Of a stretch of DNA of 64,000 bases, positions 9,757-63,685 are shown in pieces (the stretch's first letter is position 1; the number at the start of each line of letters is the position of its first letter). Source of the DNA: Thecamonas trahens ATCC 50062 (Eukaryota; Protista; Apusomonadida); the NCBI RefSeq assembly GCF_000142905.1, contig NW_013657655.1:248001-312000 (forward strand), read 5' to 3'. The notes beneath the pieces were generated by a model. That model was not told where the DNA came from. It saw nothing but the letters and a program-made list of their open reading frames with translations, and did no database searches. Made by a program: the position numbers and the translations under genes.

Positions 9757-9965
9757 CGTTCCACTGCTGGACAAAGTTGAGTCGGGTCGAGTCGACTGGT
9801 GCCAACTTCCCCCATCGCTTTTCCATTTTGCCTGTTGCAGGGCAACACGAACGGCTCGACCCTATTGCCTGGCAACCAGGCCACAAAACAACACGCGATC
9901 TTGCGGCATCCCGACATGGATATCACTCCCCATCACACTGCAAGACCCTCACTGGACTACATTAC

Positions 9966-27068: not shown

Positions 27069-27269
27069 GTGATGGGGGTGGGCGGAGTTAAGCGGGGTGG
27101 GGTGGAGAGGGGTGGGGACGGGTGGAGGCTACTAGCCATCGGCTGTTCAATGGCTGTCTCATTGCATGCTGCGAATGGGTGGTTGGGACTGCAAGAGGAA
27201 TGGTGTACCGGATTGATGGTTCGACATGGCGGTGGTGGTGGTGGTGGTGGAGGGGAGGGGGGGGGATGG

Positions 27270-30459: not shown

Positions 30460-33400
30460 TCATTGGCGCGGCTCGGCGAGCAGGGAGAGGTCATAGCACG
30501 CGTCGTCGTCCTTGCACTCCATATTGACGAGGTAGTGCGCGATGGGGAGCGAGACCTCGAACGGGTACGAGTCGTGCTGGTACTGCAAGATGTCGCGGAT
30601 GACGTTGGCGGCCATGCGGCGCTTGACCATGTTGATGAGTCCGCCGTCGATCTGGTCGTCGTTGCCGTCCTCAATAAACGTCAGGTCGGTGAGGTGGACA
30701 CCGAGATAGGGAATGCACGGAGGCTTGCAGATCCGGATGTGGTTGCGGAGCATGGCGTACGCCCGGTGGTTTGAGGTCAACGACTTGAGCGAGTCAAACT
30801 CGGCAATGAGCTTCGAGTCGACTCGCGCCCAAGCCCGCTTGAGCCGGCGGACCGAGGCGTTGGAGAGCCCGGCGACGACTTCCATCACTCCATTGAGGTT
30901 GTTGAGCGCCTTGAGCTCCATGGCGAGCTTGATAAAGTAGGCGATGATCTTGGCCCGCGCCTTGGGCTTGAGCTTGGTGTTCTGCACTACTTCGGTCGTC
31001 ACCCACATCGTTGTTGTGTTGAAGTGGACAATGGTGCGGAAGATCGATGGCGCCGTCTTGGCCTTGTTTGGCCCGGACCAACGGTTGTTGAGGCACTCGG
31101 TGACCGGAATGGCCTGGTACATCTGCATTTCAAGGAGGCACATGTTCCGCGCGAGGTCCTTGATGTTGATCGAGAACGGGTTGGAGATGATCTGGCTCTT
31201 GGGCGGCGGCGGGAGCGACTCAAACGAGAGCTTCTTGGCTTTTCCTCTTGCGACGCCTTGAGCTTGCGGTCGAGGAGCGCGAGGAGCGACGCTGCCGGTC
31301 GCTTCATGCCTGTTGCCGTCATGATGTTCGACGCAAAGTCCTTGAGCATGGCGAGCAAGTCTTCGTTCTCCTCAAAGTCACGAAAGTACTTGTCGAGCCA
31401 TCCGCGGAGCACGTTGTACACCCGCAGCCGGATGGGGACCAGCTTGCGCTTCTTGAACTCGGCTTGCGCTGCTGCATCGAGCGACGCCGGCGCCGTGATG
31501 CAGTACCGCTCAATCATCTTTTCCATCAGCGCAATCGGGTTGGTAAACGACCGGTACGTGAGCATGAATGCCTGCACGTACTCCATGTCCGGGTATTTTT
31601 CAAACGTCAGCCGCTCGACAAGCCGGTACAGCGTCCCGCACTTGACCGACGGGTAAGACGACCCGCCGCCCGCAGCGCCCGACTGCGCTTCGGCCGGAAG
31701 CTCTTCCGGTGACATAAACTTGATGTCACGCTTGTCGGCAAAGTACGCCTCGGGTGAGTCGTCGGTGAGGAGCGAGAGCGAGAGCGATGCGTCCGACTCG
31801 CCGCCCTTACCTGCCCCGTCACCGGAGCTGGCGCCCGCAGCCTCGGCCTCGGCCGCTGCAGACGCCTTGGCCTTGGCCTTGGCTGCCGCCTTGGCCTCGG
31901 CTGCCTTCTGGATCCGCGCCGCCACATCCGACGCATCGCCCGGATCCTGCAGCAGGGAGTGCAGCTCCGAGAGCTTGGCCTCCGAGTACGTGCGGCCCTT
32001 GATTCGCCGCAGCGAGGCCCGCCCGGGCTTGAACGGCGACGCCGAGCTGCCCTCACCCGACGCAGACATGTCGAGCGACATGTGGCCCGAGCCCGAGTCC
32101 TCGCCGCCGCCCGACTCGGCGCCCTGCGGCAGCTCCATGCCAAACGCCCGCCGCATCTCGGCGAACCGGTCGACATCGTCGCCGTCAAGCGTCCCGTACA
32201 CCGATGCCTCGAGAATTTCCTTGGTCGCCGCGTTGAGCGAGACGTCCATGGCGTCGGGCACCAACGAGCTGTCGCCGCTCGCCTCGGCCGCCGCCCGCAG
32301 CTGCGCCAGCCGCTGCTGCAGCCGTGCGTTCTCGTCGAGCAGCTCCTGGATGCCAAAGTACAGCTCGTCGTTCTCCTCCTCCCACTCCTCGAGGAGCTTG
32401 AGCTTGGAGAGGAGCTCGTTGACCCGGAGTGAGAGCATGCCCTTCTCCTCAAGCACGTTGAGCAGCGTCCTCCGGTAGTCGGCGTTGGTAGCGGCAGACT
32501 TGGTCGCCGTCCGCGTCAACGTCTGGATCTTCATCTTGGCCCCGGTCACCTCTGCCACAAGCGCCTCGACGTCCGACGTCAGCGCCGCCGCCTCGCTCTC
32601 AAACGCTGCCTTGGCGGACTCCAGCTCGGCAATCGTCGTCCGCAGCTCGGCCATAGCCGCCTCGTTCGACGCCACCTGCGCTGCCAGTGCTGCGCCCTCG
32701 CGCGAGTTGCTCGAGTCGAGCGAAATGGCCTGTGCATCCTCCACCTTGGCCGCAAGCACCACGTTGACCTTGCGGATCTTGGCCATCTGCGCACGCAAAA
32801 ACTCATTCTGTGCCTTCCACTGCGCCGCGTGCTTTTGCGAGTCACGTTCGCGAGCAAGAATCTCCTTCCGCTTCTCGATTCTCGCCCCGAGCTTCTTCTT
32901 GGACTTGCGCGCCTCAGCCTTGGTCGCCAGATTCGCGTTGAGCGCCGCGGTCAGCTTGTCCATCTTGGCCTGGGCCTCGGCTCGCTGCGAGTCCACCAGT
33001 TGGATCTGCCGCTCGAGCTGTGCGTTCTGCGTCTGCCACAGCTGGGCGTTTTCCATCGTCGCCTTCAGTTCAGTCCACTGCTGCATGAGCGTTGTCTTGT
33101 CGTCCAGTAGCTGCGCGAGCTGCGTCCGCATCTCCTGCATTCGGCTCATCGAGTTCTCCGAGTTTTCCAACTCCTGGAGCCGAATGTTGAGCGCGTGCTT
33201 CTCGATCACCAGGTGCTGCAGCTTGATCCGCACCTTGCGCTGCACGTGCTCGGCCTCGGACTCGGCCTGCCGGATGTGCTCAATGAGCATTGCCGCCTCG
33301 GCCGCCTCCTCTGCTGTCCGCGGTGGGGCCTTGGGCCGTGGTGGCGGCACCGGCTTCACACTCCGCGCCATAGCCTCGCCGCCTGACGCCGAGCCCGAGC

Positions 33401-33650
33401 CCGATTCGCCGCCCTCGCCCTCGCCGCCTCTCGTCGCAGCCACCTGTTCGGCGAGCTTCTCATTTTCGGCCTGCAGCGCCTCGGCGCGCTCGGTCAGCCG
33501 CCGCCGCTCCGAAATCTGCGACGCAAGCTTGAACTTGACCTTTTCCCGGAACGTCTCCATGTCCGCCTCGGCCTGCTCTAGCTCAGCCTTGAGCTCGAGG
33601 TTGGCCTTTTGCGCATGGCTAAAGTTTTGGCTTTCGCTGCCTGACGCCAT
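30460..33650 (-). CDS. Ras guanine-nucleotide exchange factor (long coiled coil + REM + CDC25); frameshift near 31245
   Basis: REM VKCGTLYRLVERLT..YVQAFMLTYRSFT..IRLRVYNVLRGWLDKYFRDF; CDC25 LNNLNGVMEVVAGL..PPCIPYLGVHLTDLTFIEDGN..INMVKRR..SLLAEPR. Confidence 0.92.
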
Positions 33651-34215
33651 GAGCCCTTCTCGTGCCACCGTCGTCCAGAAAACCAGGGGTATGGGGGTGC
33701 GGGGAGAGAGAGAGAGGAAGGGAGTGGGGAATGGGGGGGGGGGGGGGAGGGGAGGGAGGGGAGGGGTGACGGAGGGTGGTGGGGGGGGGGGGAGGGGGAG
33801 GGGTAGAGAGCGGTGGGCACAAAAGGGGGGGGAGGGAGGGAAGGCTGCCTGGCCTGATCGCCTCGACCTGCCAGTCGGCCAGGTTGTGGCGGTTGGGGAG
33901 AAAGGGCGAAACATGACGGCGGGAAGGCCAAAAAAAATGACAATATGCGTCGTTCACGCAGCAATCACAAGACCACGCAGTGGTGCACGGAGGGCGGGAG
34001 GGGGCAGGGGGAAGTCAGGCGGTCAGAGGGATCGGTTTTACTCGATGTCTCGGCACTGCTCGCTTGCGTTGATGGTTCGGCGTGGCGAGCGATGGATGGC
34101 TTGCGTGAGGAAAGGCTGGCCAGTGGCTGGCGCTACAGTTGCAAAAGGTTGACGACAGCCGCCTGCTGGTGCAGCTCCACTTTCGTCACCGACATACGGC
34201 GGCAGTCCGGCTCCA

Positions 34216-36603: not shown

Positions 36604-39412
36604 ATGCCACCTCCCGTGGCATCCCGTGCATACGGGCCGGCTGAACGAACTCTGTATGTGGCTGTGGTGAGCGTTCTGTAGCCTGTCACCGTCCCCCCCT
36701 GTCCCCCTCCCGCCCTCCTTCCTTGCAAGTCAATAGCAACCCGGGATGACGTCCACCATTTCGTTTGGCCAATAGGCTCACGCGTGAGCGGGGGATATAT
36801 CCCTTCGCGTGTGGCTAGGGATGGGAGTGGGTGAATAAGCTTGGAGAACAGGGAAGGAGTGTGAGCAGGACATTTGCACTTACTCTTGTGTGGCTTGGTT
36901 GTGATGGCGGTGGCTGGTGACGGCCGAATGGCGTGGTGCTGGCCTCTCGCTGTGGACGTGCGGGGATCTCGGGGGGGGGGGTCTGTCTTGGCCATGCGTC
37001 CCTCAACAGATATGTTGGCTCGCTGGATTTGAGAGTGACTCGCGAGGAACTGGAGCAGGTTGCGCTGGACGCACTGGCCGAGGCCGAGGAGGCGCTTGCG
37101 AGTGAGTTTGGGGGAGGAGGCGGCAGCAGCAGCAGCAAGCGGGGGCTCTCGTCAGAGCCGAGCGGGCGCGCCGGGCGCAAGGGCGGGAGTCGGACGGGCT
37201 CCAGCGGGCGCGGGGGCCGAAAGAGTAGGGGCAGTCGGCGGTCGTCGTCGCAGTCGGGCGGACGTGCGAGCTCGTCGCTCGGCACGGTTGTCTCTGCCAA
37301 AATCATTCTGGATGCCGAGACGCACGGGTCTGCCGGGTATGGGTTTGTGGAGTTTGAGACGCGCGAAGGTGCACAGGCAGCAATGCCGATTCTCCAGGGC
37401 CGGCGAGTGCGTGCGCTGCGGATCCGAATTAATTGGGCGGTGCAAGGCTCGCGGCGGGTGGCGGACGAGGACGGGCTGCACTCGCTGTTTGTAGGCGACT
37501 TGTGCAAGTCTGTGGACGACGACATGCTGCACGATGCGTTTGCGCATTTTTCGAGCCTCACGTCGGCGCGGGTGATGTGGGACGTGCGAACCGGGACGTC
37601 GCGCGAGTTTGGGTTTGTCTCTTTCCGCGACGCCAGTGACGCCGAGCGTGCGCTCAAGACCATGGGTGGGACGATGCTGGGGCGGCGCCCGATCCGGGTC
37701 AACCGAGCCAACAAGAAGACGCACTCGAAGAACACTGCCGTGGGCACGGCAGCGGTGATGGTGGAGCGTGCGCCGAGCACAGGAACCGGGGTCAAGGTTC
37801 CGACCGGCTCACGCGACGGCACTCTCGTCATGTACACCGACGGCGACTTTGGGAGGCTCTCTGCGCTCGGGCGCGGCTCGTGCGAGCTCTTCCTCTCCAA
37901 GCTCAAGTCGAAGATGTCTGTGGGCGAGTTTGAGGCGGCGCTTGCCAAGCACGGAGTCATTGAGACTATTGTGTACAACCGCAAAAAGGGCACGTGCCGG
38001 GTCACATTTGAGTCGCACCACCAGGCTGTTTCTGCCATCATCGGCCTGCACGGGTGGGCGCCGGCCGGCTGCCCACCGCTGCAGGTGGCGTGGTCCAACT
38101 CAGGCCGGTCGCGGTCGCTGCAGCGGACGGCGTCGGCGCCGATGGGACCGGCCAGTGGCAGATTTGGCGAGCGTGGGCGGAGCGGCGACTCGGCCGACGC
38201 GTCCCGTTGTGCTGGATTGACTGACACGCGTCCGCCGTCGTACCTCGCGCCGTCGGCGTCGATGGCGTTTGACGCCTACTCGGGCCTCGGCTCGGGCCAT
38301 GGCTCGGGCGAGGTGAGAGACTTGTACGCGCCGAGGCGCGGGAGCTCGCGGCGAAGCCCGCTGAGCGGCGGAAGCAGTACCAGTCATCAGTCGTCGGCGT
38401 CGATCTCACCCGACGCGATGGCGTACGCGCCGCCGCCGGGCTTTGTGAGCGCGGGCGGGTCGGCGCCGAGCATGGCAGCGCCGGGCTTTGGCGGCTATGG
38501 TCCGCCGCCAGGCATGGGCGGCGCCGCCGGGGTGGCGCCGGGCAGCAACGGGTTTGTGTACCCGGGCTACCCGATGCCGTTCGCGGCACCTGGGCTCGGC
38601 GGCTTTGTCCCAGGCATGTCGGATGCGATAGCCGGGCGCGACCCGTGGGCCTCACCAATGTTTGCCAACTCGACGGGCCTGTCCGGCTCGGGCATAGCGA
38701 CCGGTCGCAACGGGAGGCCACTGTCGTACCCGCCGCGGGCCAATCAGTCGGAGCCGTCGAGCCCAACAGGCGTGGTTGCGCCCCCACTGGGCCGCTGCTG
38801 AGCGTGCCTGGTGACCGCGGCGAGCGCGGCGACCGGTCGCCGTCACCCTTCAACAACCAGCGGACCGGGACGACCGAGTCGCTCTCATCACGCTCGCCGT
38901 CGCCAACGCTCTACTCGCGCTCGCTCTCTGCCCAGTCGAGCACCTCGGGCCTCGCCGGTCTCGCGGCATCGCTCAACCTAGTCCCGCCGAGTCGGACCGG
39001 CGGTGCACCGCCGCCTGACGACGGCGAGGAAACGCCTGAGTCTGGCGAGGCGTCACCGACGCTCGGCCTTCGGCGGTCGTCGTCGCTCACCACCACGGGC
39101 GAGTCGCTCGCCTCGCTCAACCGGTCGCACTCGGAGACCGTCCCGCCGCGCTCGGTCTGGACCGACGACCGCATCTCTTTCCCTTCTATGGGCGGCGCCG
39201 CCGGCGCGCCCTCCTCTGTACCTGTCCTCCTCCTCCCGCATGCTTCGCTCTCACCGCACGTCTCGGACGACCAGTCCTGGCTCCCATCGTCGCCCTCGCT
39301 CCATAAGTCGCGGTCGATGACCGACGTGCGCTTGGCGCAATTGGCGTTTGAATCGGCACAGGAGCCCGCAATGGCTGCTCGCCCGCGCAATGGCGCTCCT
39401 CCACCGTCCTGA
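36604..39412 (+). CDS. Multi-RRM RNA-binding protein (TIA1/Pub1/UBP1-like) with long Ser/Pro-rich tail; frameshift near 38783
   Basis: Exon 36604-36653 plus intron GTATGT..CAG to 37009 rebuilds RNP2 RTLYVGSL. GYGFVEF, IRINWA, LFVGDL, ARVMWDVRTGTSREFGFVSF, LGRRPIRVN, and a third degenerate RRM. Confidence 0.85.
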
Positions 39413-44510: not shown

Positions 44511-47500
44511 TCACTTGCGCCGCATGATTAGAACTGCAAGCAAGGCGCCCGTTGCAACAAGCCCGACGCCCGCCACTGCAGGCAGCGCGTAGCTCGTCCA
44601 CAATGCGTCGCTCTCGCCGGCCGCAGTCGTTGATGGCACAGCGTCTGCCGTCCCGCTTGAACCCGTGCCCAGAGCCACCTTGGCTGGCGCACTGGCAGCG
44701 GCATCGTCCCCAGCCGGCTCGACCGTGACTGAGACCGATGCGTTGGCGTCGGGCAAGATCTCACTCGGCTGGGCCACGCTCTCGCTCGCGCTGCCGTCGC
44801 CATCACCGTCAAGGAATCCAGCAAACCGCTCGCGGAAGCGCGAACGATTCTTCTTGAGCGAGCCGCCGAGCAGGCCCGAGGCCCGGTCGAAGGGGTAGTC
44901 GACGACAACGACCGAAGCTGGCACGTGCTCGTCGCCGAGACCCGCCGCGAGCGCAGCGTCACGGAACCCGCGCCGGAGGACGCCGGCGGTTGCCGGGTCG
45001 GCCGCCGCCGCCGCCTCGCTGGGCGTCACAAAGGCCACCAGCTTGCCCGAGTCGGAGAACTCGATAAAGACGTCGTCCACGCCATCGACGTTGGTGTACA
45101 GCGTCTCGAGCCCGTTGAGCGCCACCAGAGCTGGGCCCGACTTGCGGAGCGCAGAGACTCGCTCGACAATGGTGTAGGTGCCGCGGATGCTGTCGTACTG
45201 TGCCACGTCGCCAGTGGCGTACCAGCCCGAGCCAAACTCGCCGACGCCGTAGTAGCCCAAGTTGAGGTTCGGCGTCCGCACCAGGAGCTCGCCCACCGAG
45301 CCGACAGGCGCGTCTGGGAAGAGCTCCGGCAACGGATCCAGCTTGACCTCCACGCCCTTGGACGTGAGCACGTACCCGTTCGACGTGATTCCGCCGGTCT
45401 CGGTCGTCCCGTACGAGTCGACAAACGAGATGGCCGGGAAGACCGACTTGACCCACTCGACCAGGTGCGGCGCCGTCGGCGCGCCGCCCGTGGCCAAAAA
45501 CGCAATCCGCGGGCCAAAGAGTGACTGGATGTGGAGGTCGGCAGCGTCGCGTGAACCGGCTGCGCTGCCGATTGCCACCCACACCGCATGCAGGCCGGCC
45601 CAGATCCGCGGCGGACACGCCATTGCCGACGGCTTGAGCGCGGCGACAAGCTCGAACAGCGCCTCGACGTTGTTCGTCGTCCGCCCGCTTGGCACAAGCA
45701 TCTTGTCCTTCTTGGCTGTCTCGTGCTCGCGCCAGTTCGAAGCACCATAGTGCGCAAAGCCGACTCGCCCGCCCTTGGCCACAAACTCCCACATCTTCAT
45801 CCGGTCCGACGAGTGCGAGAGTGGGATGTAAGAGACAGTGATGAGCGGCCACGACGACGACGGCTCGGAGAGGTCGTTGACAAACGACTGTGGAGTGACC
45901 ATGACACCCTTGGGCGCTCCTGACGAGCCTGAGGTGTAGAGCAGCGTAAAAATGTGCTCGTGACCGGACGCCACGCCACGGCAGAGCCGCGGCTCCGGCA
46001 GAACATCCTTGAAGCCATCGACGCCACGTCCCTCGCCGCGCGCCAGAGCCTCCACCGTGGGCGTCAGCAGCGTCGCCAGCCGCTGGACTGCCACCTTGGG
46101 CCCAAACGCCGGGAGCTCCTCGTCGCCGTCGGCGTCCAGCACGATGACGTGCTGCACACTACCCAGCGCACTTGCTTCCAACGCCTCGAGCGACCAGCCT
46201 GCGAGCTCAGTCACTGCCGACGAAGCCACCACCTGCTTGGCACACCCAACCACGACCGGGCTTGCGTTGGCGAGCACTGCACTCGCCTCGCTGCACGTGT
46301 ACGTCGTGTGGATGCCGAACGAGCCGGCACCCGACAGTGCGCACGCCATGTCCAGCAGCGCAACCTCAAACGCGTTCGGCCCAGAGATGCCCACAAACTG
46401 ACCGAGCACCCCCATTCCGCCCAGCACCTCGGCGAGCCCGGCCGCGAGTTCGTACATCACCTTGTACGTCAGCCACAGGTAGCTGTCGTGCTCGACAAGA
46501 AGTCCCGCGTCGCGCAGTTGGCGGGTGAGCGGTGCAAGCGCCGGCGCCGACTGTAGCTTGCTCGGATCCGGCACGCCGAGTGCCAGCCGGGTGCTGAACA
46601 CCTCGGCCGCTGCCGTTAGCACGTCGGCCGGCGTCACGCCGTCAAGCGAGGCCGGGAACACCTTGTGCCGCAGGTGAGCTGGGTGCGCCGCATCAAAGGC
46701 AAAGGCGGCACCAGAGTCGGGATACACGTGCGCGAGAAACTCGCTGCGAACGCTGGCCTCGACGCCCGGGGCATCAAGTCCGTCGGCGAGCGCAGGCAGG
46801 AGCTTCCAGCAGTACGCGCAGTAGTTGGCCTCCGAGTCGAGCGAAACCGCTCGGAACGTGCCCCAGTCGTTGATCGTCTCCTCCACCAGCAGGCCGCACC
46901 CCGTGCACCACACCGAGGCCGAGCCAAAGACCATGGCCGGTGCACGGCTCGGGCGCGGCGCCGAGCCGGGTGAGCCGCCGCCGTCGGCGCCCGCACCGTC
47001 GTCCGGCGGAAAAATCCAGCCGGGGAACGAGGTGAGCCAGAACGGGACCTCAAAGCCGTAGCACTTGCCGGCTTCAACCAACGCAGCGCACGCCGCGCGG
47101 AACTCGCGCCACCGCTCTTCTTTCTCTGGCACCGACAGCTGCTTCGCCACCTTGACTTTGAACGTCGCCACACAGATGGCAAGCTTGCGCGCGACCAGTG
47201 CACCGTTGACTCGCGCAAGGCCAGCCGACGCCGACGCCGCTGGGCTCGCGTCGTCAAACGCGACGCTCGCCTGGATCGCCAGTTTGCGGAGCGTCGGCAC
47301 CAAGCTCTCGGACGCGTACGGCGCAAACGAGGCTAGCGCTCGCGCCACATCTGCCCGCGTCGCCCGCTCCGTCGACTTGAGCGCTGCCGACGCGGCCTCG
47401 AGCTTGGCCACCGCGGCAGCGTTCCACTTGGGCGTGCGGTCGGCAATAACGCTTGCGGCGTTGCGGAGGACGGCAAGCGCGGCGTTCATGGCATCAAGCC

Positions 47501-50500
47501 CGTGCGGGTCCTCGCACTGCGACTGTGAGTCGACAAACTAAAGTCGTACATCCACGCCTGATGCCGGTCAGACGCGTGCGACGGCGGGAGGATCGCACCG
47601 ATGACCGGTGGCTCGCCCGACGACTGCGATGCCAGCGCATCGGCCATGGCCAATACCAGCGTGCCACCGCTGCTGCCGCTCCCGCCAGTCGCACCCGGAG
47701 GGAGGACACAGACGTCGCCGGTGCAGACTGGCGCAGCAGCCGGCGCAGGGCTTGCTACCACCGCGCCGCCGCCACTCGCCCGCCACTGCGCCCGCTCCTG
47801 ACGTGCCTGCAGCCGCGTGTCCTCGGAGAGCGTCTCGAGCGTGGCGTAGATGCGGTCAAGCGCCTCCTTGTGGCGCGCACCGACCGCGCCGCGACGAACC
47901 TTGCCCAGCGCCGAGAGCATGCCGTTGGCGACACTCCACGGCTCGGTATCGAGAACAACATCGGCGGGAATGTGCTCCAACGGGAGGTTGGCGGCGCTGC
48001 CGGCTGCCTCCAGCTCGGCGAGAATGGTCTTGCGAGCGAGGTCCGGGGCAAGCGCCGCCACCGCGGCAGTGGGGACGACGACGGCCACAAGGCGGTCGGC
48101 GTTGCGGTCGGCGCAGAGCGCCAGACGCGCAACGCCAGGCGTCGCAGCATACGTCGACGCCTCCAGCGAGGCAGCCGGGACCCAGACAGATCGGCCCGAG
48201 ACGTAGAGCTCGACAACGTTGGAACGGCGGTCGATGATGCGGAGCCGCGGCTGCGGCTCGCCGGGTGTGTACGCCAGCTCGCCAATGTCGCCGGTCCAGA
48301 ACCAGCCGTCACCAAAGCGGCCGCGGTGGCGTCGGCGTTCTTAAAGTATCCGCTGGTCATGACCGATGGGTCCTTGGCACGGACCAGGATCTCGCCACGC
48401 GGGAACGGCAGGTCGCTGGCGAGGTAGCCCATCTCCGGCACGTCAACGAGGCGGACGTCGACGTCTGGCGAGAGAGCACCGTTGACAGAGATTCCCGGAA
48501 ACTCAGTGGTTCCGTACGCATCGTGGACCCGCTCCTCATTGCCCGGAACCAGCACGTGGGCCATAAGGGCCTTGACCTTGTCCGAGGTGTGGGCGCCGCC
48601 CGTGACGACAAAAATGAGCTCACCGCCAAGCGCAGCCCGGAGCGCGGCGTGGGCCCGGATCTCGTGGGCCTTGCCCCACCGAGTCTTGGCTACTGCCGCA
48701 TCGACAAGTTCATGGACGGCGGCCGACGAAGCGACGTCTTCAAGCGCGGCGGACGGCGCGGCGGCGGCAAGCGCAGCGGCAAAGTGCGGGTCAGGCACGA
48801 CTCGTGCCGCAAGGTCGGCCCGGTACGAGTCGTACACCCGGTTCCAAAAGTGCGAGAGGCCGAGCATGAAGCGTGGGCGGACGGCGCGCATGTCCTCCAG
48901 CAAGTCGTCAAAGTCTGGGCGCGCAAAGGCGATGCTCCCCCAGCCATGCATACCTGCCAGCACACACCGCGGTCGGCGCCGTGTGCCAGCGGCATGTACG
49001 AGACCGCCACCTTGTCGGTGCACTGGCCGATGCCGCCGTGCAGCGCATCGTTCTTCCACCGGGCTGCAGATACCGGGATTCCCTTGGGCGCGCCGGACGT
49101 GCCCGACGAGTACATGATGGTGGTCAGCTCGTCTGGTGCCTGGGTGGTGGAGCCTGACGCAGCCTCGATCGGCACAGACGTCGAGAGGCCGGTGTGCGAG
49201 CAGCAGACGTGGCCGGGCGCCGAGTGGAGGCCGCGGCCAGCAAGGAGGTCGTAGTCAAAGATCTGCAGTGAAGCCGGGACGGTGACTCCGCCAAACAGCG
49301 GTTCGCCGGTCGCGGCGGCCTCGGCGTTGGCGGTGGCGTAGCCCATGACAATCAGGTACTTGAACTTGGGAAGCGCCGCGCGTGGCTCGGAGCCCGAGTC
49401 GAGGATGCGGCGCCGCTGACGAGCTGCCGCCGCAGGATCGGCTCCGCCCAGGCCGGGCGTTCCACCGACGCCGCCGCCCATCATCGAGTTGATGCCCGAC
49501 GCCGCCATCATCTGGTTGAGGCCAAACAGCGAGCCAGCGGCAGCCGACGACGACGCCGCGCCCGACGACGCCGCCGAGCGGGCAGCTGCGGCAGCAATAA
49601 ACTTGCCAGCCTGGTCGTACGAGCACACAACAGCCTCCATTTCGGTCTCGGCCATAATGGCCTGGATCTCGTCTTGCGGCCACGAGGTGTGGAGGCCGAC
49701 CGAGACGAAAGCGTCAAAGACACAGGCAAAGTCTACAACGAGCCACTGCGGGCGGTTTTCTGCGCAGAGACCGACCTTTGCCCCCCGCGGGAGGCCAAGA
49801 AACGAGCTCATTGCACAGGCCAGCTGTGTTGCCTCTGCGCCCACCTCCTTGTACGTGGTGTACACGTACTCGCGGGTGCCCGACTGGGGTGCGAGTGAGT
49901 GAGTGTGGAAGGAAAGAAACCATTGCGACACGGGGGAAGAGGAAGGGGAAGGGAAGGGGGAAGGGGAGGGGCAAGGGGGGAGGGGGGAGGGGGGGGGAGG
50001 AAGAGAGAGGGAGGGGAGGGGAGGGAGGAGGAGATGCCACGTACTCCTTGACCGAGTAGAACGGGTCCTGTCCGGACATGGCAGCTGTGGTGTTGCAGCC
50101 GACAGAGGGGGGGCAACTGGGGGAGGGTGAGAGGGTGTAGAAGGTGGGGGGTGTAGGAGGTGGGGGGTGTAAGAGGTGCGGGAGGGGAGGGAGGGAGGGG
50201 GGGGGTGGAGTGTTTGCCTTGTCGCCTGACGACAGAGCCTGCCGTGTGGGGTGGGGTGCCTCGATAGTCTCTGGCCTGTGCAGGTCGTCGCCGTCGGCGT
50301 CAGCTCGATCGATCGGTTCGTTCGCACCGCACCTTGTATACCCGATCTAGGTTGGGGGGAAGGGCGAGGGGGAGGGGGGGGGAGAGGGCGGCTGTGGACG
50401 TGGTGGTCGCACAGGCGGCAGGTGCTGGTGGTGGAAGGCAAGAGGGGCGGGTGTTGGGGAGGGCGAGGGAGGGGGCTGCTTACCTCGTTGGTGCGTCCGG

Positions 50501-50591
50501 TTCCAAGAAAGGGTGCATCGTCATAGAGGGTAAACGCCCGCTGGAGTGCGTGGGCCACAGATGGGGCCTTTGCCACAAACGCGTCGGTCAT
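44511..50591 (-). CDS. Large tandem acyl-adenylating enzyme (two ACSL/CAR-like AMP-binding modules, Zn-finger-like linker, C-terminal TM); three apparent frameshifts
   Basis: Exon 50591-50484, intron to 49883. Module 1: IMYSSGTSGAPKG, YGTTEF, LVDVPEMGY..PRGEILVR, GWFWTGDIG, GMLSALGKVRR. Module 2: LLYTSGSSGAPKG, YGTTETGG, WYATGDV, GLLGGSLKKNR. Breaks near 48937, 48315 and 47540. It could be two genes split at 47489. Confidence 0.75.
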
Positions 50592-51125
50592 GGTAGGGGC
50601 CACAGCGGGTGGGCACGGGAGAAAGAGAGGTTGGCGAAGGTTTGGGTGTTTGGGTGGAGCGGATTAATGGTATGGGGGCTGAAGCGGTGGATCGATGCCA
50701 ACGACAGCTCTGAAACAGATGCTGATGGTGGAGGTGGAGCTGGTAGCTGCCTCATCGTACTCTTCCATACCTTCACTACACCCCCCATTGTTTCTCCACT
50801 ACACCCTCTACTGTTTCCCTCCTCGTCTGTGCCATTATCTTGCCCCGATGAGCTGCCATGCCCAAGTCAACCACCGCAGGTGTCTGGGAGTCACGCGGCA
50901 ATGAAGGATCGGAGAGAGAGACGGCAGTGACCGCGGTGGCAGGGAGGCAGACGATGACGGCGCCACGTGACCTTGCCCACAAGGCCTTCGCACACACCTC
51001 ACTAGTCCTCTCCCCCCACCCACCCACCCACCCACTCCCTCCCCTCCCTTACACACACTCCCCCCCCTCCCCCCCTCCCCCCTCCCCCCTCCCCCTCCCC
51101 CTTCCCCCCCCCCTCTCCCGCTGCT

Positions 51126-58928: not shown

Positions 58929-61473
58929 ATGGACGTGCTCGACGTGGGCGTGGACGACCTGGTGGCCCGGGCGGTAGAGGAGGAGGAGGCGCTGCTGGCG
59001 GCCGAGGCAGCGGCGCAGGCGGCTCCGCATCCAGAGCCGGTGCCAGGAGCATACGGATACATTCCAGAGTCGGTAGCAGTGGCGACAGTGGTGGGAGCGG
59101 CGAGTGGCGGAGTAGGGCGGACAGGCGAGGCCGTGCTGGATGCGGTGCTGAATCTGGACGACGGCGCGCAGGTCAAGGCGGCGGACATCGGCATCACCGC
59201 TGAGACAGAGTCGGACGATGGCAGTGGTGGGGGTGTTGAGAGCGAGAGCAGGGGCGGGAATGGGAGCAGAGGTGAAGTGGCGGGGCTGGTGAAGATGCAG
59301 TCGATGTCGCTGACGGCAACGGCACTGGTCAAGGCCGCGGAACGCGCGCATGGCCTGCGGGTGGACGACGTGTCGTCGGCGGGCGAGATCCTGGCGGCAG
59401 TGCAGGAGCTGGTCGCTCAGTATCCGCCGCGGTATGCGTCGGCACTGTCGAATGTCAAGGTGGGGGCGTTTGGCATCAAGCGGAGCGAGCCGCTCGCCGA
59501 CGCGCTCCGCAAGGCCGCACGCATCATCGACGATCCGCAGCCCATCACCTCTGTCGAGGCCGTGTACCTCGTGCTGCTTCTGACGACCAACATGCAGGGT
59601 GTGCTTCGAGTTCCCATGGTGGTCGTCTCACGACGAAAGGGCGAGCGATACGTATCGTCGTATCTCATGCTGCGGCACGGCGGTGCGTACGGCCTCACCG
59701 GGCAGTCTGTAGTGCCCGAGGGCTCGGACTCGCTGTTCAATCTGGCATTTGCGCACGGCGACGTGCCAGGGCTTCTCACTGCGCTGCTCGCCATCTACAA
59801 CCACCTCGACCATGAAGTGGCCGCCATCCACCTCGGGCTGCCGGTCCCGCACGACCGCGGGCGCCGCGCGCCGGTGCAGTGGAAGTACCTCTCGCTCCTG
59901 CTCGTCCGCGAGGGCGTCGAGGTTGCGATGTCGCGGGCCCACATGTACGATGCTTTTCTCCGCAACATGGAGTCGTCGCTGCAACTGATGTGGCGCAAGT
60001 CGATGGAGGAGATGGAGCGAGTCGATCTCATCAACCGCGGGTCGTACATGCTCAATGCTGCGCGGCGCAAGCCACTTCGCAAGCGGCTTGCCCGCAAGTG
60101 TGAGGGCTACCGGGTCATCAAGGTCGTCAAGGGCCTTGTCCATGGCGAGTGGTGCTCCAAGAGCGTGCGTCCGAGCTCGACGCCGAGCTCGACGACGCCG
60201 CGAGTGTGACTCGGTCCGCCGACGAGGTCCATGCCATTGTCAAGCGGCTGACGTCGAACCACAACAGGATCCGGCTCAATGAGCACCGTCGCTGTGAGTG
60301 TCTTGACTGCGTCCAGTACAAGCCGCCGGCCCGCGAGCGGTTCACCATTGAGTCGGCAACCTCGCCGAGTGCGACTGGAGGCAAGCCAGTGGCGTTCGGG
60401 CGCGACCGCGGCGCCACGCTTCGGCTTGTCACCTACAACCTGCTCTCGGCATACAACTCGCACCCGGACGACTTTGACTACTGCTCCGACGAGGTTTTCG
60501 ACTGGCGCTACCGTGCGCCACGGTTGCTGGTTGAGATCCTCGGCTACGACCCGGATATTCTCTGCTTGCAGGCCCTCGACGAGGCTGCGTTTCTAGACCA
60601 GTTTGAGCCGCGGTTGGCCGAGGTTGGCTACGACGGGCTCTTCCGCGCCTCGGGCACCGGGGACGGTGTCGCCATCTTCTACCGTGCTGACGTGTACTCG
60701 GCGGTCTCGGCCCACGCGATCGCACTCGACACGCTTGCCGCCGACAAGCTCGTCGGACTCGACCGCACCGACCCAGCCGCCAAGATCTACGGCAAGGTCG
60801 CCGGCATGCACCACCACAACGTGGCACTCACGGTTCTCCTCCGCGAGAAGAAGCTCGACATGGCCAACCAGACCGACCGCATCATCGCCGTCTCTAACGT
60901 CCATCTCTGCCCGCTGTATATGGATCCTGAAGGCGCCGACGCAGCGCGAGTGGTGCAGACGACCCAGACCACTCTCTTTCTCGAGGAGCTCGACCGCATT
61001 CTCAAGCACGCCTCGACCGGGACCAAGCTCTGGGACTGGCCGCAGATTGTGGTGGGCGACTTTAGCTCGTACGCGCTCGACGGGCCGGCCTCGCTGCTCA
61101 AGGCCCAGTTCCCGCTCGCACACCCGTTCCCGGTCGCAGACTTGCCAGGCATCATTTCGCACGCCCAGGACCTTGCCGAGACTTACGGTCCGTTTGCCAA
61201 CGCATACGTCGACGCGCTCGATCTGACCATGGCCGACTCGCGCGGCGGCATCGATCTCGACATGCCGTTCTACACCACATGGGGCCCGACGGCAAGCACA
61301 TCTTTGACCACGTCTTCTTCTCCGAGCACCACTTTGGGCTCCGCTCGCTCCTTGGTCTCCCGCTTGATCCTGTGTTCCATGCTCCGCTACCCAACGCTGC
61401 CCAGTGCTCCGACCACATTGCGCTTGTCGTCGACCTTGGCACCATCTCGCATCGGCTCATCTCCCACCAATGA
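58929..61473 (+). CDS. Vasohibin-like pseudo-peptidase fused to a CCR4/Angel/nocturnin-type EEP domain (frameshifts near 60148 and 61283)
   Basis: FGIKRSEPL..PITSVEAVYL..GAYGLTGQS..IHLGLPVPHD..VQWKY (vasohibin); LVTYNLL..FDWRYR..DPDILCLQ..DGVAIFYR..NVHL..VVGDFSS..IFDHVFF..PNAAQCSDHIAL (EEP). Confidence 0.78.
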
Positions 61474-61484
61474 GCCCGAGCGCG

Positions 61485-63392
61485 CTAGCTCTGCCACGGC
61501 CGCAGCACCGCGAAAAGGCCGTGCGCTCGGCGCTTTGCAGAAAACGGCGCCTGGATCGCTGACTGTGGGAGTCGGCTCACTCCGCCTCCTGTCGGCGCTG
61601 GCGTCATGGTTGCGGCCATTGCCAGGGTGTCAGAGCTCGGCGTCGGCTGCGAGGGCGACGACCGGCTGCGGTCAGCCGATGGAAGTAGCGCTGAACGAAG
61701 TTGCGCACCGCTGCAGTCGCGCGGGAAAGGAACAACCGGGGCCTGGGTGATGAAGCCCTCGAGTGCCGCCGCCAGTCGGGCCTGGCGGGTGGCGGCGGCG
61801 GCGTCGCCGGTCGCAGCGTCGGCGATGGTTGCCGAGCCGCTCAACGGCGGATCCAGGCGTGCCTCCCAGGGTTGAAAGCCGCGGAGCTCAATGTCCTCCT
61901 CCAGCACGTTTCCGGGCGCGCTGGGTAAGCCTCGCTCGCTATCGCGGAGCGCCGCAAGGGCCTCAGCGGCCCGGGCGACAGCGGTGTGGAGCGCGGCAGC
62001 GATAGTCTCGTCCGACGCGCCGAGAGCGTGGACGCGGCTGGCGGCGGCGTGGAGCCAACCGGCAACAATGCATGCACCGGTCACGGCCGCTGCACACTGA
62101 TGGGTAAATATGGCGTCGAGAAAGTCGGTGAGAAGGTGGAGCACGAGGACAATGGCAAACGGCGGCGCAGTGCCAGCGCGCCAGGCGTGGGCGGTGTAAA
62201 CACAAACGACCGCAAGGTGTAGCGCAGTGCAGCGAGCGGCCGCATCGTTGTCGCCGAGCCCAAGCCCGCCGCGCTGGTGCAGCGATGGTGCCAAATCCGG
62301 GACGTCGGTAGGGGACGGGGAAGCAAGGATGGCAGCGTGGACGCAGACAAAACGGAGCGCGGCAGTCGACGATCGCCAGGTCGGCGGCGGGAGGCCCGAG
62401 CGAGGTCCAGCGGCGGCAGCCGGCCGTGCGGCCGCCGCCGCCGCGCCGCGCTTGATCGAGTGCTCCAGCAGTAGGGCAATGTTGTCGGTGACCGAGGGAA
62501 ACGGGAGCGGCGCCGCAAGCGCGCGGACATAGCGGTAGAGTGCAGTGAGCGGGTCGCGGGCGTAGGTGGCGAGGACGGCGAGCTGGTTGTGGGCGGCGCC
62601 AAGGCCAGGAGCGGCGGCCAGCGCAGCGTGGTACGCGGCACTGGCACCGTCCCACACACGCATGCTACGCGGGCGGACCAGCTGGCGGTAGCGGGAAACG
62701 TCGCCGGCGTGGAGGTGGCAGCGAGCGACTGCTGCTGCTGCTGCTGCTGTGGTGGCGGCGGCGGAACCGGCAGACGCCGCGGATGCTGCAGGCGACAGGC
62801 GCCGCCTGTCGAGGCGAAACTTGCGGGTGAGCCTGTGGGCGAGTGCGGCGTAAAAGGCACCGGCCTCGTCAAGCAACTCATCGAGGGCGGCACGAGTGAC
62901 AGCGCATGCCGGACGCGCCTTGACTGCACCCCGCAACCGCTCGATGCCCGAGTAGTAGACGGCGGTCCAGATCCGCTGCTCGGCCGCCGGCGGCGCCGCC
63001 AGGCTTGCCTCGCCGGCAGTGAGGAGGAGGACATTGGCATAGCGGTTGCGGATCTCGATCCGGAGCGAACGCTCCGCCGCCACCTCTCCACCATCGCGGA
63101 ACCGTGCGAGCGCTGCCTCCTTCTTCCGGGTCTCGGCGAGGTAGCCGGCCACGTCGGCGATCGGCTTGCACGGGATGCGGACTCGTGTCGGGACTGTCGC
63201 CGCAGGCGCCGTCTTGCCAGGCGCCGCCCGTACCGGCCGGGCCGGAGACGCCGATCGTCGCCGCTTCCGACTCGGGCTCGCCGTGTCCAGCACTGCCGTA
63301 GCAGTCGAGGCTGATGTGGACGTGCCGCGCGCGGCTGATGATGACGGTCCGGCCGTCGCCCGTCGTGCGCGCGAGCGGCGGCGGCGAGGCAT
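61485..63392 (-). CDS. Est1/SMG5-6-7 family TPR (14-3-3-like) protein, no PIN domain (SMG7/Ebs1-like)
   Basis: RIWTAVYYSGIE, EAGAFYAAL, RCHLHAGDVSRYR, PGLGAAHNQLAVLA, YRYVRALAAPLPFP, LEEDIELRGF. Confidence 0.85.
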   Translation of the reverse strand: MPRRRRSRARRATAGPSSSAARGTSTSASTATAVLDTASPSRKRRRSASPARPVRAAPGKTAPAATVPTRVRIPCKPIADVAGYLAETRKKEAALARFRDGGEVAAERSLRIEIRNRYANVLLLTAGEASLAAPPAAEQRIWTAVYYSGIERLRGAVKARPACAVTRAALDELLDEAGAFYAALAHRLTRKFRLDRRRLSPAASAASAGSAAATTAAAAAAVARCHLHAGDVSRYRQLVRPRSMRVWDGASAAYHAALAAAPGLGAAHNQLAVLATYARDPLTALYRYVRALAAPLPFPSVTDNIALLLEHSIKRGAAAAAARPAAAAGPRSGLPPPTWRSSTAALRFVCVHAAILASPSPTDVPDLAPSLHQRGGLGLGDNDAAARCTALHLAVVCVYTAHAWRAGTAPPFAIVLVLHLLTDFLDAIFTHQCAAAVTGACIVAGWLHAAASRVHALGASDETIAAALHTAVARAAEALAALRDSERGLPSAPGNVLEEDIELRGFQPWEARLDPPLSGSATIADAATGDAAAATRQARLAAALEGFITQAPVVPFPRDCSGAQLRSALLPSADRSRSSPSQPTPSSDTLAMAATMTPAPTGGGVSRLPQSAIQAPFSAKRRAHGLFAVLRPWQS

Positions 63393-63685
63393 GCAAGAGA
63401 CGAGTGTGTCGTCGAAATCGGGGGGGACGAGAGAGAGGAGGGGCTGTGGGGGGAGAGAAGTAAGACGCGTGGGGAGGGGAGGGAGAAGGGGGTGTGGATG
63501 GGACAGCAGTGACTTTGCGCGTGCGTGGTGTGAGCGAGGGTGTGTGTGTGGGTGCGGAAAATGTGTGATCAACCAATCTGAATGGCGTGACATAGTCACC
63601 ACGGGGGGACGTTTCCTGTTTGGTTGGTGGTCGATGAGATGCCAGAAGGCGATGATGGTCACGAGAGTGTGCGTGTGTGTGACCT

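What the first reader, a model, noticed from the sequence alone, without database searches (positions are those of the whole stretch)
58929..61473. Dead vasohibin (tubulin carboxypeptidase) domain fused to a degenerate CCR4/Angel-type nuclease
Seen: 59400-59900 aligns end to end with vasohibin (PIKCLEAV->PITSVEAV, FRHIVL->YVSSYL, GRYGALGMS->GAYGLTGQS, GQSVSHD..IEWKH->GLPVPHD..VQWKY). The catalytic Cys is Ser (TCT at 59550, one base from TGT) and the catalytic His is Ser. The following EEP frame opens after a TGA at 60101, overlaps the first ORF, and has no ATG before the middle of the domain, so it cannot be a separate gene; one added base fuses them. The EEP keeps TYN, GDF, D-x-x-F and SDH, but the Mg-binding Glu (LQE->LQA) and GDFN Asn (->S) are changed. 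Known: vasohibins bind the alpha-tubulin tail and microtubule lattice; CCR4-family EEPs act on RNA ends or NADP(H). Inference: a double pseudoenzyme or retuned enzyme linking microtubules to RNA or nucleotide handling (axonemal/cortical RNA anchoring, or tubulin-coupled mRNA turnover). I know of no described protein with this architecture.
Basis: partly seen in the sequence, partly recalled or inferred. Interest (0 to 1): 0.82.

Follow-up and report, generated by a model that had tools for sequence, protein, structure and literature searches.

The report
Dead vasohibin fused to CCR4-like domain
One gene of the flagellate Thecamonas trahens joins a vasohibin-like protease domain to a CCR4-like nuclease domain, and both lack key catalytic residues; the fusion is real and conserved in two related organisms, its frame breaks look like one-base sequence gaps, and its function is unknown.

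Summary
Window 58929-61473 (+) is one gene of about 848 codons, public locus AMSG_06048 of Thecamonas trahens, annotated only as a hypothetical protein. It reads in three frames because one base is missing at about 60159-60164 and at 61286-61287.

Two uninterrupted orthologues share the architecture: P0127 (843 aa, two metagenome assemblies, 58% identical) and P0002 (778 aa, 37% identical). Both run collinearly across each break. The public 809-aa model bridges the breaks with "introns" of 26 and 89 nt that delete 39 codons conserved in P0127, part of the EEP core among them.

The N-terminal domain is a genuine vasohibin by profile. The orthologue model matches VASH1/2 structures. It has Ser/Ala/Ser at Cys169, Ser/Ser/His at His204, and has lost K168, R222 and R223. 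The C-terminal domain is a CCR4-family EEP with the Mg-binding Glu changed to Ala/Asp/Asp and the GDFN Asn changed to Ser/Gly/Gly.

"Double pseudoenzyme" is therefore supported. The proposed microtubule-RNA link is not, because the active-site tubulin-tail-binding residues are gone. Among 126 vasohibin-family representatives, only this clade carries an EEP domain. I found no paper describing it. It is a lineage-restricted new domain architecture of unknown function and moderate interest.

The parts
58929..61473 (+). Whole gene (about 848 codons plus stop), read in frames 0, 2 and 1 of the assembly. It is public locus AMSG_06048 of Thecamonas trahens.
   Evidence: GC3 tracks frame 0, then frame 2. 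The intact orthologue P0127 maps as three abutting pieces: query 4-407, 405-784 and 780-842. The X-joined pieces align at 57.8% identity over 823 positions to P0127.
58947..59024 (+). Conserved N-terminal helix (GVDDLV..EEE..), followed by a low-complexity, probably disordered stretch up to about 59300.
   Evidence: It is conserved between T. trahens and P0127. In the P0127 model it is helix 9-32 at pLDDT 73-80, followed by residues 34-119 at pLDDT below 50.
59466..59909 (+). Vasohibin-like domain (Pfam-matched core). Ser replaces Cys169 (59550-59552), Thr replaces K168 (59547-59549), Ser replaces His204 (59655-59657), Ser221 is kept (59706-59708), and Val-Val replaces R222/R223 (59709-59714).
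   Evidence: Pfam PF14822 E 4.4e-15. PDB phmmer alignments. Custom family HMM, 84.8 bits. The orthologue model matches VASH1/2 at Foldseek E about 3e-14, rmsd 2.7 A over 197 columns.
59910..60430 (+). Helical linker conserved in all three orthologues, with a Cys cluster (codons at 60099, 60153, 60293, 60299, 60308: C...C...CxCxxC).
   Evidence: Three-way alignment, where 'RxCEG', 'IVxRLTS' and 'NExRxCECxxC' are shared. AF2 confidence is low here, pLDDT 33-54.
60159..60164 (+). Frame break 1 (frame 0 to frame 2): one base is missing in '..TCC AAG AG CGT..'.
   Evidence: P0127 reads VHGEWCSKKLASELDAE. The window reads VHGEWCSK in frame 0 and RASELDAE in frame 2. The P0127 DNA has an A5 run here.
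60138..60163 (+). The 26-nt 'intron' of the public gene model. It is spurious and deletes VHGEWCSK(x), which is conserved in P0127.
   Evidence: Exon mapping of P0001 onto the window, and the three-way alignment.
60431..61416 (+). CCR4-family EEP domain. Asn195 is kept (TYN), Ala replaces the Mg-binding Glu240 (60572-60574), NVH is kept, D410 is kept (61058-61060), Ser replaces Asn412 (61064-61066), D489 is kept (FDHV), and SDH is kept (61408-61416).
   Evidence: PDB phmmer: PDE12 2e-13 and CNOT6L 4e-12 for the window piece, CNOT6L 3.6e-19 for P0127 over the whole domain. Pfam PF03372 scores 27.6 bits on P0001 and 38.2 on P0127. Foldseek gives CNOT6L E 4e-16. Motif table against the genome's own CCR4 paralogues.
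61286..61287 (+). Frame break 2 (frame 2 to frame 1): an incomplete Pro codon in 'TGG GGC CC GAC', at a C run.
   Evidence: The window reads PFYTTWG(P) in frame 2 and (GP)DGKHIFDHVFFS in frame 1. P0127 reads PFYSAWGPDGKHLFDHIFFS and P0002 reads RFYSTMGPAG.
61208..61296 (+). The 89-nt 'intron' of the public gene model. It is spurious and deletes 30 codons, including the conserved FYTTWGPDGK segment of the EEP core.
   Evidence: Exon mapping and alignment. The segment aligns to CNOT6L 'YTNYTFDFKG'.

Best explanation
Window 58929-61473 is a single protein-coding gene of the apusomonad flagellate Thecamonas trahens (AMSG_06048). It encodes a protein of about 848 residues.

Domain order:
- a conserved N-terminal helix followed by a disordered stretch;
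- a vasohibin-fold domain;
- a conserved helical, Cys-containing linker;
- a CCR4-family EEP (endonuclease/exonuclease/phosphatase) domain.

Shown:
- The two frame changes are each a one-base gap. They are not introns and not gene boundaries.
- The fusion is conserved as an uninterrupted ORF in two other organisms.
- The vasohibin domain lacks the Cys nucleophile in all three orthologues. It lacks the His in two of them, and the active-site basic residues K168, R222 and R223 in all three.
- The EEP domain lacks the universal GDFN Asn in all three orthologues and has the Mg-binding Glu changed to Ala, Asp and Asp.

Inferred:
- The gaps are most likely homopolymer undercalls in the assembly, so the gene is intact in the organism.
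- The protein has not worked as a canonical detyrosinase or deadenylase/phosphatase since the common ancestor of the three orthologues.
- It most likely acts as a non-catalytic binding or scaffold protein. The EEP domain is its most conserved part (66% identity, against 47% for the N-terminal half), so it probably keeps a ligand- or partner-binding surface. The vasohibin-like domain would serve as a protein-interaction module rather than as a reader of the tubulin C-terminal tail.
For: One gene:
- P0127 (843 aa) is a single ORF in two independent metagenome assemblies. P0002 (778 aa) is a single ORF on a 3.2-kb contig.
- Both carry Pfam Vasohibin and Exo_endo_phos.
- Both are collinear with the window across both breaks. 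P0127 maps to the genome as three abutting pieces.
- A tail-to-tail EST1-like neighbour is conserved.

Gaps rather than introns:
- Residues inside both annotated introns are conserved in P0127 and align to the CNOT6L core.
- Another gene in this window has RasGEF_N and RasGEF in two overlapping frames at an A4 run, a shift in the same direction.
- Notes from other windows report many breaks of the same type (unverified).

Selection:
- The three-frame reading (X at each break) has no stop before its TGA.
- The two P0127 alleles differ only at 5 synonymous sites plus the stop codon.

Domain identity.

Residue states:
-.
- Residue roles come from PMC6937246 and PMC6746945.
- About 122 of 126 vasohibin representatives keep Cys.
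Against: - No reads or transcripts were available, so a real double frameshift (a young pseudogene) in this strain cannot be excluded.
- P0002 keeps His204 beside a Ser at the nucleophile position, and two orthologues have Asp for the Mg-binding Glu. Residual or altered catalysis is therefore possible in some lineages.
- D410, D489 and H529 are kept in all three, and N195 and the NxH His in two of three. That is more retention than expected for a purely structural relic.
- The non-catalytic binding role is an inference from residue loss plus conservation. No partner or ligand is identified.
- The AF2 model has low confidence in the linker and gives no domain-domain information.
Confidence: 0.8

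Rival explanations
1. The gene is a real pseudogene in T. trahens. The two one-base deletions exist in the organism and no full-length protein is made, while the orthologues remain functional.
For: There are two frame breaks within 2.5 kb. No read or transcript data were available to exclude this.
Against: - The three-frame reading has no stop before its TGA, keeps high GC3, and is 58% identical to P0127 along its whole length.
- Both breaks are 'one base missing', one of them at a C run.
- A break of the same type splits a RasGEF gene in this window.
- Notes from other windows report many such breaks genome-wide.
Confidence: 0.1
2. The public 809-aa model is right: two very short introns (26 and 89 nt) are spliced out.
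For: Both intervals begin with GT and end with AG, and each has a length of 2 mod 3, which restores the frame.
Against: - The removed codons are in frame, have coding-like GC3, and are conserved in the intron-less orthologue P0127: VHGEWCSK and VDAL...PFYTTWGPDGK.
- The second interval contains the segment that aligns to CNOT6L YTNYT...G, just before the DYIF motif.
- From my own knowledge, 26 nt is shorter than typical spliceosomal introns.
Confidence: 0.03
3. These are two separate genes: a stand-alone dead vasohibin ending at 60209 and a separate EEP gene.
For: Frame 0 has a stop at 60207-60209, and the tail 'SSTPSSTTPRV' looks like a plausible low-complexity end.
Against: - Frame 2 has no ATG before mid-domain, and the two frames overlap.
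- Both orthologues read straight through: RxCEG...IVxRLTS...NExRxCEC.
Confidence: 0.02
4. It is a retuned, still active enzyme. Either the EEP domain works with an altered metal site on a new phosphoester substrate, or the vasohibin domain works as a Ser-His hydrolase.
For: - EEP D410, D489 and H529 are kept in all three orthologues, and N195 and the NxH His in two.
- Glu is replaced by Asp in two orthologues.
- P0002 has Ser plus His at the vasohibin dyad.
- The EEP is the most conserved part, at 66% identity.
Against: - No candidate nucleophile is conserved in the vasohibin domain: Ser/Ala/Ser at Cys169 and Ser/Ser/His at His204.
- T. trahens has Ala at the Mg-binding Glu.
- The GDFN Asn is lost in all three. 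From my own knowledge, this residue is a hallmark across the EEP superfamily.
Confidence: 0.15
5. One reading: a tether that binds the alpha-tubulin tail or microtubule lattice through the dead vasohibin domain and binds RNA or nucleotides through the dead EEP domain.
For: - The vasohibin fold is retained.
- Two of the three L34-region basic residues are kept in T. trahens ('GIKRSE').
- T. trahens alpha-tubulin ends in -EEY.
- The EEP pocket is partly intact.
Against: - K168, R222 and R223, which are required for VASH1 activity on the tail (PMC6937246), are T/V/V, S/V/V and N/V/G in the three orthologues.
- The L34 basic residues are not conserved in P0127 or P0002.
- No SVBP was detected, although that search is uninformative.
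- No RNA-binding module is present.
Confidence: 0.08

Closest known systems
VASH1/VASH2 (tubulinyl-Tyr carboxypeptidases, Pfam PF14822; transglutaminase-like Cys proteases acting with SVBP)
   Same: The profile match is well over the Pfam threshold. The predicted fold superposes on VASH1/2 at rmsd about 2.7 A over about 197 columns. Ser221, the GxxGxS motif, the GLPVPHD motif and the following Trp are kept.
   Different: Cys169 is Ser (Ala in P0127) and His204 is Ser (kept only in P0002). K168, R222 and R223 are non-basic. The Pfam match covers only profile positions 84-227 of 245. The domain is fused to an EEP domain. No SVBP was detected.
CCR4-family EEP enzymes: CNOT6L/CCR4, PDE12, Nocturnin, ANGEL2
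   Same: The best sequence and structure matches are CNOT6L, yeast Ccr4 and PDE12. The motifs YN, NxH, GD, D(Y/H)(I/V)F and SDH are present. The YTTW...KH segment resembles nocturnin-type members.
   Different: The Mg-binding Glu (CNOT6L E240) is Ala, and Asn412 of GDFN is Ser. There is no LRR, so it cannot dock on CAF1 as CCR4 does. The genome has a separate genuine CCR4 orthologue on contig C28, at E 3.7e-73 to yeast Ccr4. The subfamily could not be resolved.
Cys-less vasohibin-like proteins without an EEP domain: the T. trahens paralogue on C16 (L002, 662-aa open frame) and P0072 (625 aa)
   Same: They group with the three fusion proteins in a five-member clade with 0.98 support. All lack the catalytic Cys.
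   Different: They have no EEP domain. The C16 paralogue has Pro at the Cys position and Val at the His position. The grouping may be partly a long-branch effect.

Membership tests
Vasohibin (PF14822), as a fold or family member | Profile match above the curated threshold | tested here: met
   56.1 bits against a cut-off of 24, E 4.4e-15. A custom family HMM gives 84.8 bits.
Vasohibin (PF14822), as a fold or family member | Transglutaminase-like vasohibin fold | tested here: met
   Tested on the intact orthologue P0127, not on the T. trahens sequence itself. Domain pLDDT is 85-96. Foldseek to VASH1/2 gives E about 3e-14, TM (target) about 0.69 and rmsd 2.7 A.
Vasohibin, as an active tubulin detyrosinase | Catalytic Cys169 | tested here: not met
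   Ser (TCT at 59550-59552), Ala in P0127 and Ser in P0002. About 122 of 126 family representatives have Cys.
Vasohibin, as an active tubulin detyrosinase | Catalytic His204 | tested here: not met
   Ser (59655-59657) and Ser in P0127. His is kept only in P0002.
Vasohibin, as an active tubulin detyrosinase | Active-site basic residues K168 and R222/R223, needed for alpha-tubulin tail processing (PMC6937246) | tested here: not met
   Thr, Val and Val in T. trahens, and non-basic in all three orthologues.
Vasohibin, as an active tubulin detyrosinase | SVBP partner | tested here: inconclusive
   Pfam CCDC23 gives no hit in the genome. However, the family is 63 positions long and the control rang nowhere.
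Vasohibin, as an active tubulin detyrosinase | Detyrosinating activity on alpha-tubulin | not testable with these tools
   This needs biochemistry.
CCR4-family EEP (PF03372 clade: CNOT6L, PDE12, Nocturnin, ANGEL) | Profile or sequence match and EEP fold | tested here: met
   The broken window frame alone scores 23.9 bits against a cut-off of 24.5. P0001 scores 27.6 and P0127 38.2 bits. CNOT6L matches at 3.6e-19 over the whole domain. Foldseek gives CNOT6L E 4e-16.
CCR4-family EEP, as an active phosphodiesterase or phosphatase | Mg-binding Glu (CNOT6L E240 / PDE12 E351) | tested here: not met
   Ala (GCC at 60572-60574), and Asp in P0127 and P0002. The residue's role is taken from PMC6746945.
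CCR4-family EEP, as an active phosphodiesterase or phosphatase | GDFN Asp and Asn (CNOT6L D410, N412) | tested here: not met
   Asp is kept, but Asn is Ser (AGC at 61064-61066) and Gly in both orthologues.
CCR4-family EEP, as an active phosphodiesterase or phosphatase | C-terminal Asp and the SDH His (CNOT6L D489, H529) | tested here: met
   FDHV and CSDH are present. They lie in the third frame, after break 2.
CCR4 proper (CCR4-NOT subunit) | N-terminal LRR that docks on CAF1, and orthology to Ccr4/CNOT6 | tested here: not met
   There is no LRR Pfam hit. The genuine orthologue is elsewhere, at G000:C28:137046-138065, with E 3.7e-73 to yeast Ccr4.

The most novel reading that the evidence does not exclude
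Apusomonads have turned both of their vasohibin genes into non-catalytic 'readers'. This one is welded to a non-catalytic CCR4-type pocket, so the protein would couple recognition of a protein C-terminus (possibly the -EEY tail of tyrosinated alpha-tubulin, which T. trahens has) to binding of an RNA 3' end or a nucleotide. That would make it a microtubule-to-mRNA adaptor built entirely from dead enzymes, in an organism where I detected no active detyrosinase (no Cys-bearing vasohibin, no MATCAP hit).
Probability: 0.07. Interest if true: 0.75.

Novelty: new variant of a known kind. Interest (0 to 1): 0.42.

Why it matters
- It is a clean, conserved case of two unrelated enzyme folds that both lost canonical catalytic residues and were kept as one protein for a long time. 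The orthologues have diverged to 37-58% identity. It is therefore a candidate double pseudoenzyme for people who study the tubulin code or the CCR4 family.
- It corrects a public gene model. AMSG_06048 lacks 39 conserved residues, part of the EEP core among them, because two one-base assembly gaps were bridged with false introns.
- It raises a small open question. T. trahens alpha-tubulin ends in -EEY, yet both of its vasohibin homologues lack the catalytic Cys and no MATCAP was found.
- The function is unknown and the family is tiny: three sequences, apparently from one lineage. The wider impact is therefore limited unless a binding activity is found.

Tried and rejected
- **Word searches.** ORF1 found nothing, not even the locus's own product, because that product is longer than the length window. 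P0002 found only itself. P0001 found P0127.
- **Exact-sequence look-up.** ORF1 is not on record.
- **A real intron at break 1.** I considered 60100-60149 (GTGAGG...AG, 50 nt). I rejected it because P0127 reads collinearly through VIKVVKGIVHGEWCSK.
- **JGI metagenome scan.** The three-sequence alignment gave 47 pattern matches, none confirmed.
- **ESM Atlas.** Only generic CCR4-type EEP look-alikes appeared, with nothing on the vasohibin side. The first attempt failed.
- **Literature.** Searches for vasohibin with Thecamonas, for vasohibin with pseudoenzyme, and for the accession numbers found nothing relevant. The 2016 vasohibin family paper does not mention Thecamonas, fusions or inactive members.
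- **Other long vasohibin representatives.** I scanned 17 of at least 529 aa by Pfam; none has an EEP domain, and a few carry FYVE or a glycosyltransferase domain.
- **Other regions of the Cys-less relatives.** Comparing the C16 paralogue and P0072 with P0127 showed no similarity outside the vasohibin domain.
- **SVBP and MATCAP family searches in the genome.** Both gave no hits, and both are weak negatives.
- **Handling of the broken frames.** No joined T. trahens sequence was sent to any search or fold tool. The three frames were searched apart. In my own scripts they were joined only with X at each break, for alignment. The intact orthologue P0127 was folded instead.
Full report
**What is in the sequence**

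The window is about 65% G+C. Between 58900 and 61500 on the + strand, third-position G+C marks frame 0 as coding up to about 60170 and frame 2 from about 60150 to 61280.

- Frame 0 (58908/58929-60209) carries Pfam Vasohibin at E 4.4e-15, 56 bits against a cut-off of 24, on nt 59466-59909.
- Frame 2 opens after TGA at 60101-60103. It carries an EEP domain that just misses the Pfam cut-off because it is truncated (23.9 against 24.5 bits). It still matches PDE12 (2e-13), CNOT6L (4e-12), yeast Ccr4, Nocturnin and ANGEL2 in the PDB.
- The last 60 residues of that domain, including the SDH motif, lie in frame 1 (61279-61473) and align to the C-terminus of Nocturnin.
- Frame 2 has no ATG before the middle of the EEP domain.

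**Organism and public record**

A full HMMER search with ORF1 against 1.84 billion representatives returned 126 family members. The top hit, P0001 (809 aa, 99% identical over residues 1-407), is AMSG_06048 / XP_013757553.1 / UniProt A0A0L0DBP9. It is annotated "hypothetical protein" of Thecamonas trahens ATCC 50062. The window is therefore T. trahens, an apusomonad flagellate, as other agents' notes had suggested.

Mapping P0001 onto the window gives exons 58929-60137, 60164-61207 and 61297-61470. The annotators had joined the three frames with "introns" of 26 nt (60138-60163) and 89 nt (61208-61296).

**The fusion is real and the frame breaks are one-base gaps**

Two further proteins have the same architecture.

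- P0002 (778 aa) is a single ORF on a 3.2-kb contig assembled from SRR30952584.
- P0127 (843 aa) is an uninterrupted ORF in two independent ENA metagenome assemblies (loci L015 and L016) with both Pfam domains.

The three window frames, joined with X at each break, align at 57.8% identity over 823 positions to P0127 and at 36.7% to P0002.

The alignment runs straight through both breaks.

- At break 1 the window reads ...VIKVVKGLVHGEWCSK in frame 0 and RASELDAELDD... in frame 2. P0127 reads ...VIKVVKGIVHGEWCSKKLASELDAETE....
- At break 2 the window reads ...PFYTTWG(P) in frame 2 and (GP)DGKHIFDHVFFSE... in frame 1. P0127 reads ...PFYSAWGPDGKHLFDHIFFSS... and P0002 reads RFYSTMGPAG....

Searching the genome with P0127 gives three abutting pieces covering query residues 4-407, 405-784 and 780-842. 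Each break is therefore an incomplete codon: "AAG AG CGT" at 60159-60164 and "GGC CC GAC" at 61283-61290. One base is missing at each site, the second at a C run.

The annotated introns delete VHGEWCSK(x) and VDAL...PFYTTWGPDGK. Both stretches are conserved in P0127, and the second aligns to the YTNYT...G segment of CNOT6L. I take both introns to be artefacts of bridging the gaps.

Synteny supports orthology. An EST1-like gene lies tail-to-tail 11-12 nt downstream both here and in L015 (36% identity, E 2e-42).

**Assembly error or real lesion?**

I could not see reads, so this stays an inference. Several points favour error.

- The three-frame reading has no stop before its TGA, and similarity to P0127 holds along its whole length.
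- Both breaks run in the same "one base missing" direction.
- In this same window a RasGEF_N domain and its RasGEF catalytic domain sit in two overlapping frames, joined at an A4 run, and shifted in the same direction.
- By eye, most other candidate frame switches in the window go the same way.
- First-stage notes from other windows report 7-17 such breaks per window (these are leads, not evidence).

I put about 0.1 on a real pseudogene in this strain.

**Vasohibin-like domain**

PDB alignments, a 126-member family alignment and a custom HMM built from the canonical members all agree on the residue states.

| VASH1 residue | T. trahens | P0127 | P0002 |
|---|---|---|---|
| K168 | Thr | Ser | Asn |
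| Cys169 | Ser (TCT 59550-59552) | Ala | Ser |
| His204 | Ser (59655-59657) | Ser | His |
| Ser221 | Ser | Ser | Ser |
| R222/R223 | Val-Val | Val-Val | Val-Gly |

The best PDB hit is, fittingly, the VASH1 C169S mutant chain. About 122 of the 126 representatives keep Cys.

PMC6937246 reports that K168, H204, S221, R222 and the L34 basic residues are important for detyrosination. Apart from S221, which is retained, and two L34 basic residues kept only in T. trahens, these active-site residues are not conserved across the three orthologues.

An AlphaFold2 model of the intact orthologue P0127 has pLDDT 85-96 over this domain. It superposes on VASH1/2 structures at Foldseek E about 3e-14 and rmsd 2.7 A over about 197 columns. 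The fold is retained and the chemistry is not.

**EEP domain**

With P0127 the best PDB match is the CNOT6L nuclease domain over its whole length (E 3.6e-19). Foldseek agrees (E 4e-16).

The closest paralogue in the genome is the genuine CCR4 orthologue on contig C28 (E 2e-17 to the fusion; E 3.7e-73 to yeast Ccr4).

I aligned the fusion proteins with that paralogue and two other CCR4-family paralogues of the same genome. Residue roles follow CNOT6L E240/D410/N412/H529 and PDE12 E351/D496/N498/H599 as given in PMC6746945.

| Motif (CNOT6L residue) | T. trahens | P0127 | P0002 |
|---|---|---|---|
| YN (N195) | Asn | Asn | Ser |
| LQE (E240) | Ala | Asp | Asp |
| NxH | His | His | Gln |
| GDFN Asp (D410) | Asp | Asp | Asp |
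| GDFN Asn (N412) | Ser | Gly | Gly |
| DY (D489) | Asp | Asp | Asp |
| SDH (H529) | SDH | SEH | SDH |

The YTTW motif is shared with the nocturnin-like paralogue, so it is not a loss.

The Asn of GDFN is missing in all three orthologues, and the Mg-binding Glu is never Glu. From my own knowledge, that Asn is a hallmark of the EEP superfamily. Canonical catalysis was probably lost before the three lineages split.

Even so, this is the best conserved part of the protein, at 66% identity between T. trahens and P0127 against 47% for the N-terminal half. The two P0127 alleles differ only at synonymous sites and in the stop codon. The domain is under constraint for something other than canonical catalysis.

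**Other features**

- A conserved N-terminal helix (helix 9-32 in the model, pLDDT 73-80) precedes a disordered stretch.
- The linker is helical and conserved. It contains five Cys shared by all three orthologues (RxCEG, xxC, CxCxxC). The model is not confident there, so a zinc site remains only an idea.

**Distribution**

- Of the 126 vasohibin representatives, only P0001 and P0002 (plus P0127, which sits inside P0001's 50% cluster) have an EEP domain. The 17 other long members I scanned have none.
- A JGI metagenome scan with the three-sequence alignment found no further orthologue.
- In a FastTree of the domain, the three fusions group together (support 0.66). With two unfused Cys-less proteins they form a clade at support 0.98. 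Those two are the T. trahens paralogue on C16 (Cys replaced by Pro, His by Val) and P0072. This could be partly long-branch attraction.
- The organisms behind P0127 and P0002 are unknown. From 58% identity, conserved synteny and 62% G+C, I infer that P0127 comes from a relative of Thecamonas.

**How it most likely works**

*Shown.* It is one conserved gene with two recognisable folds, and canonical catalytic residues are missing from both.

*Inferred.* It is a non-catalytic binding or scaffold protein. The partly intact EEP pocket (D410, D489 and H529 retained) is the most plausible ligand site. The vasohibin-like domain is more likely a protein-interaction module than a tubulin-tail reader, because the basic residues that handle the acidic tail are gone.

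I give about 0.8 to the structural and pseudoenzyme statement as a whole. Any specific binding function has much lower odds.

*Rivals.*
- A retuned active enzyme: 0.15.
- A real pseudogene in this strain: 0.1.
- The annotated introns are real: 0.03.
- Two separate genes: 0.02.

**Novelty and verdict**

The domain families are well known. The protein is already deposited, but it is uncharacterised and mis-modelled. I found no paper on the fusion or on Cys-less vasohibins.

I class it as a new variant (domain architecture) of known kinds, restricted so far to three sequences. Interest is moderate at 0.42. It is a tidy double-pseudoenzyme candidate and an annotation correction, but no function is in hand.

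Noticed in passing
G000:C1:223561-223950 (L023, minus strand) and G000:C38:233962-234327 (L025): T. trahens alpha-tubulin ends ...DLDYVEEY, a canonical tyrosinated tail, and beta-tubulin ends ...GDYEPEY. Yet both vasohibin homologues in the genome lack the catalytic Cys, and Pfam MATCAP (PF08014) gives no hit. If a detyrosination cycle exists here, its enzyme is not identified.
   Followed up: partly
G000:C16:478351-478782 (L002: 673-2661, 662-aa open frame): A second vasohibin-like gene without an EEP domain. Pro sits at the Cys169 position, Val at His204, Ser221 is kept, and R222 is Ala.
   Followed up: partly
window 30463-33953, minus strand, junction near 31230: One RasGEF gene is split between two overlapping frames: RasGEF_N in 31002-33953 and RasGEF in 30463-31371. 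The junction is at an A4 run, the same 'one base missing' type as the two breaks in the finding.
   Followed up: partly
window 44514-50663, minus strand; also 9124-11360 (+), 25585-27128 (-) and 36921-39409 (+): These are further pairs of overlapping or abutting high-GC3 open frames on one strand, mostly shifted in the same direction. The 44514-47537 frame holds an AMP-binding domain and the 9528-11360 frame holds eRF1 domains 1-3. They are candidate additional one-base gaps or introns. I did not resolve them.
   Followed up: no
window 61471-61487, and L015 2660-2673: This gene and the convergent EST1-like gene (61485-63662, minus strand) end only 11-12 nt apart, both in T. trahens and in the metagenomic relative. 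Their 3' ends must overlap or be extremely short.
   Followed up: no
window 60099-60310 (Cys codons at 60099, 60153, 60293, 60299, 60308): A Cys cluster (C...C...CxCxxC) in the linker is conserved in all three orthologues and may be a zinc site. The public gene model deletes the second Cys. AF2 confidence is low there.
   Followed up: partly
P0072 (625 aa, unknown source): Another Cys-less vasohibin-like protein (Ser at Cys169, Tyr at His204) from an unidentified organism. It groups with the apusomonad sequences in the domain tree.
   Followed up: partly
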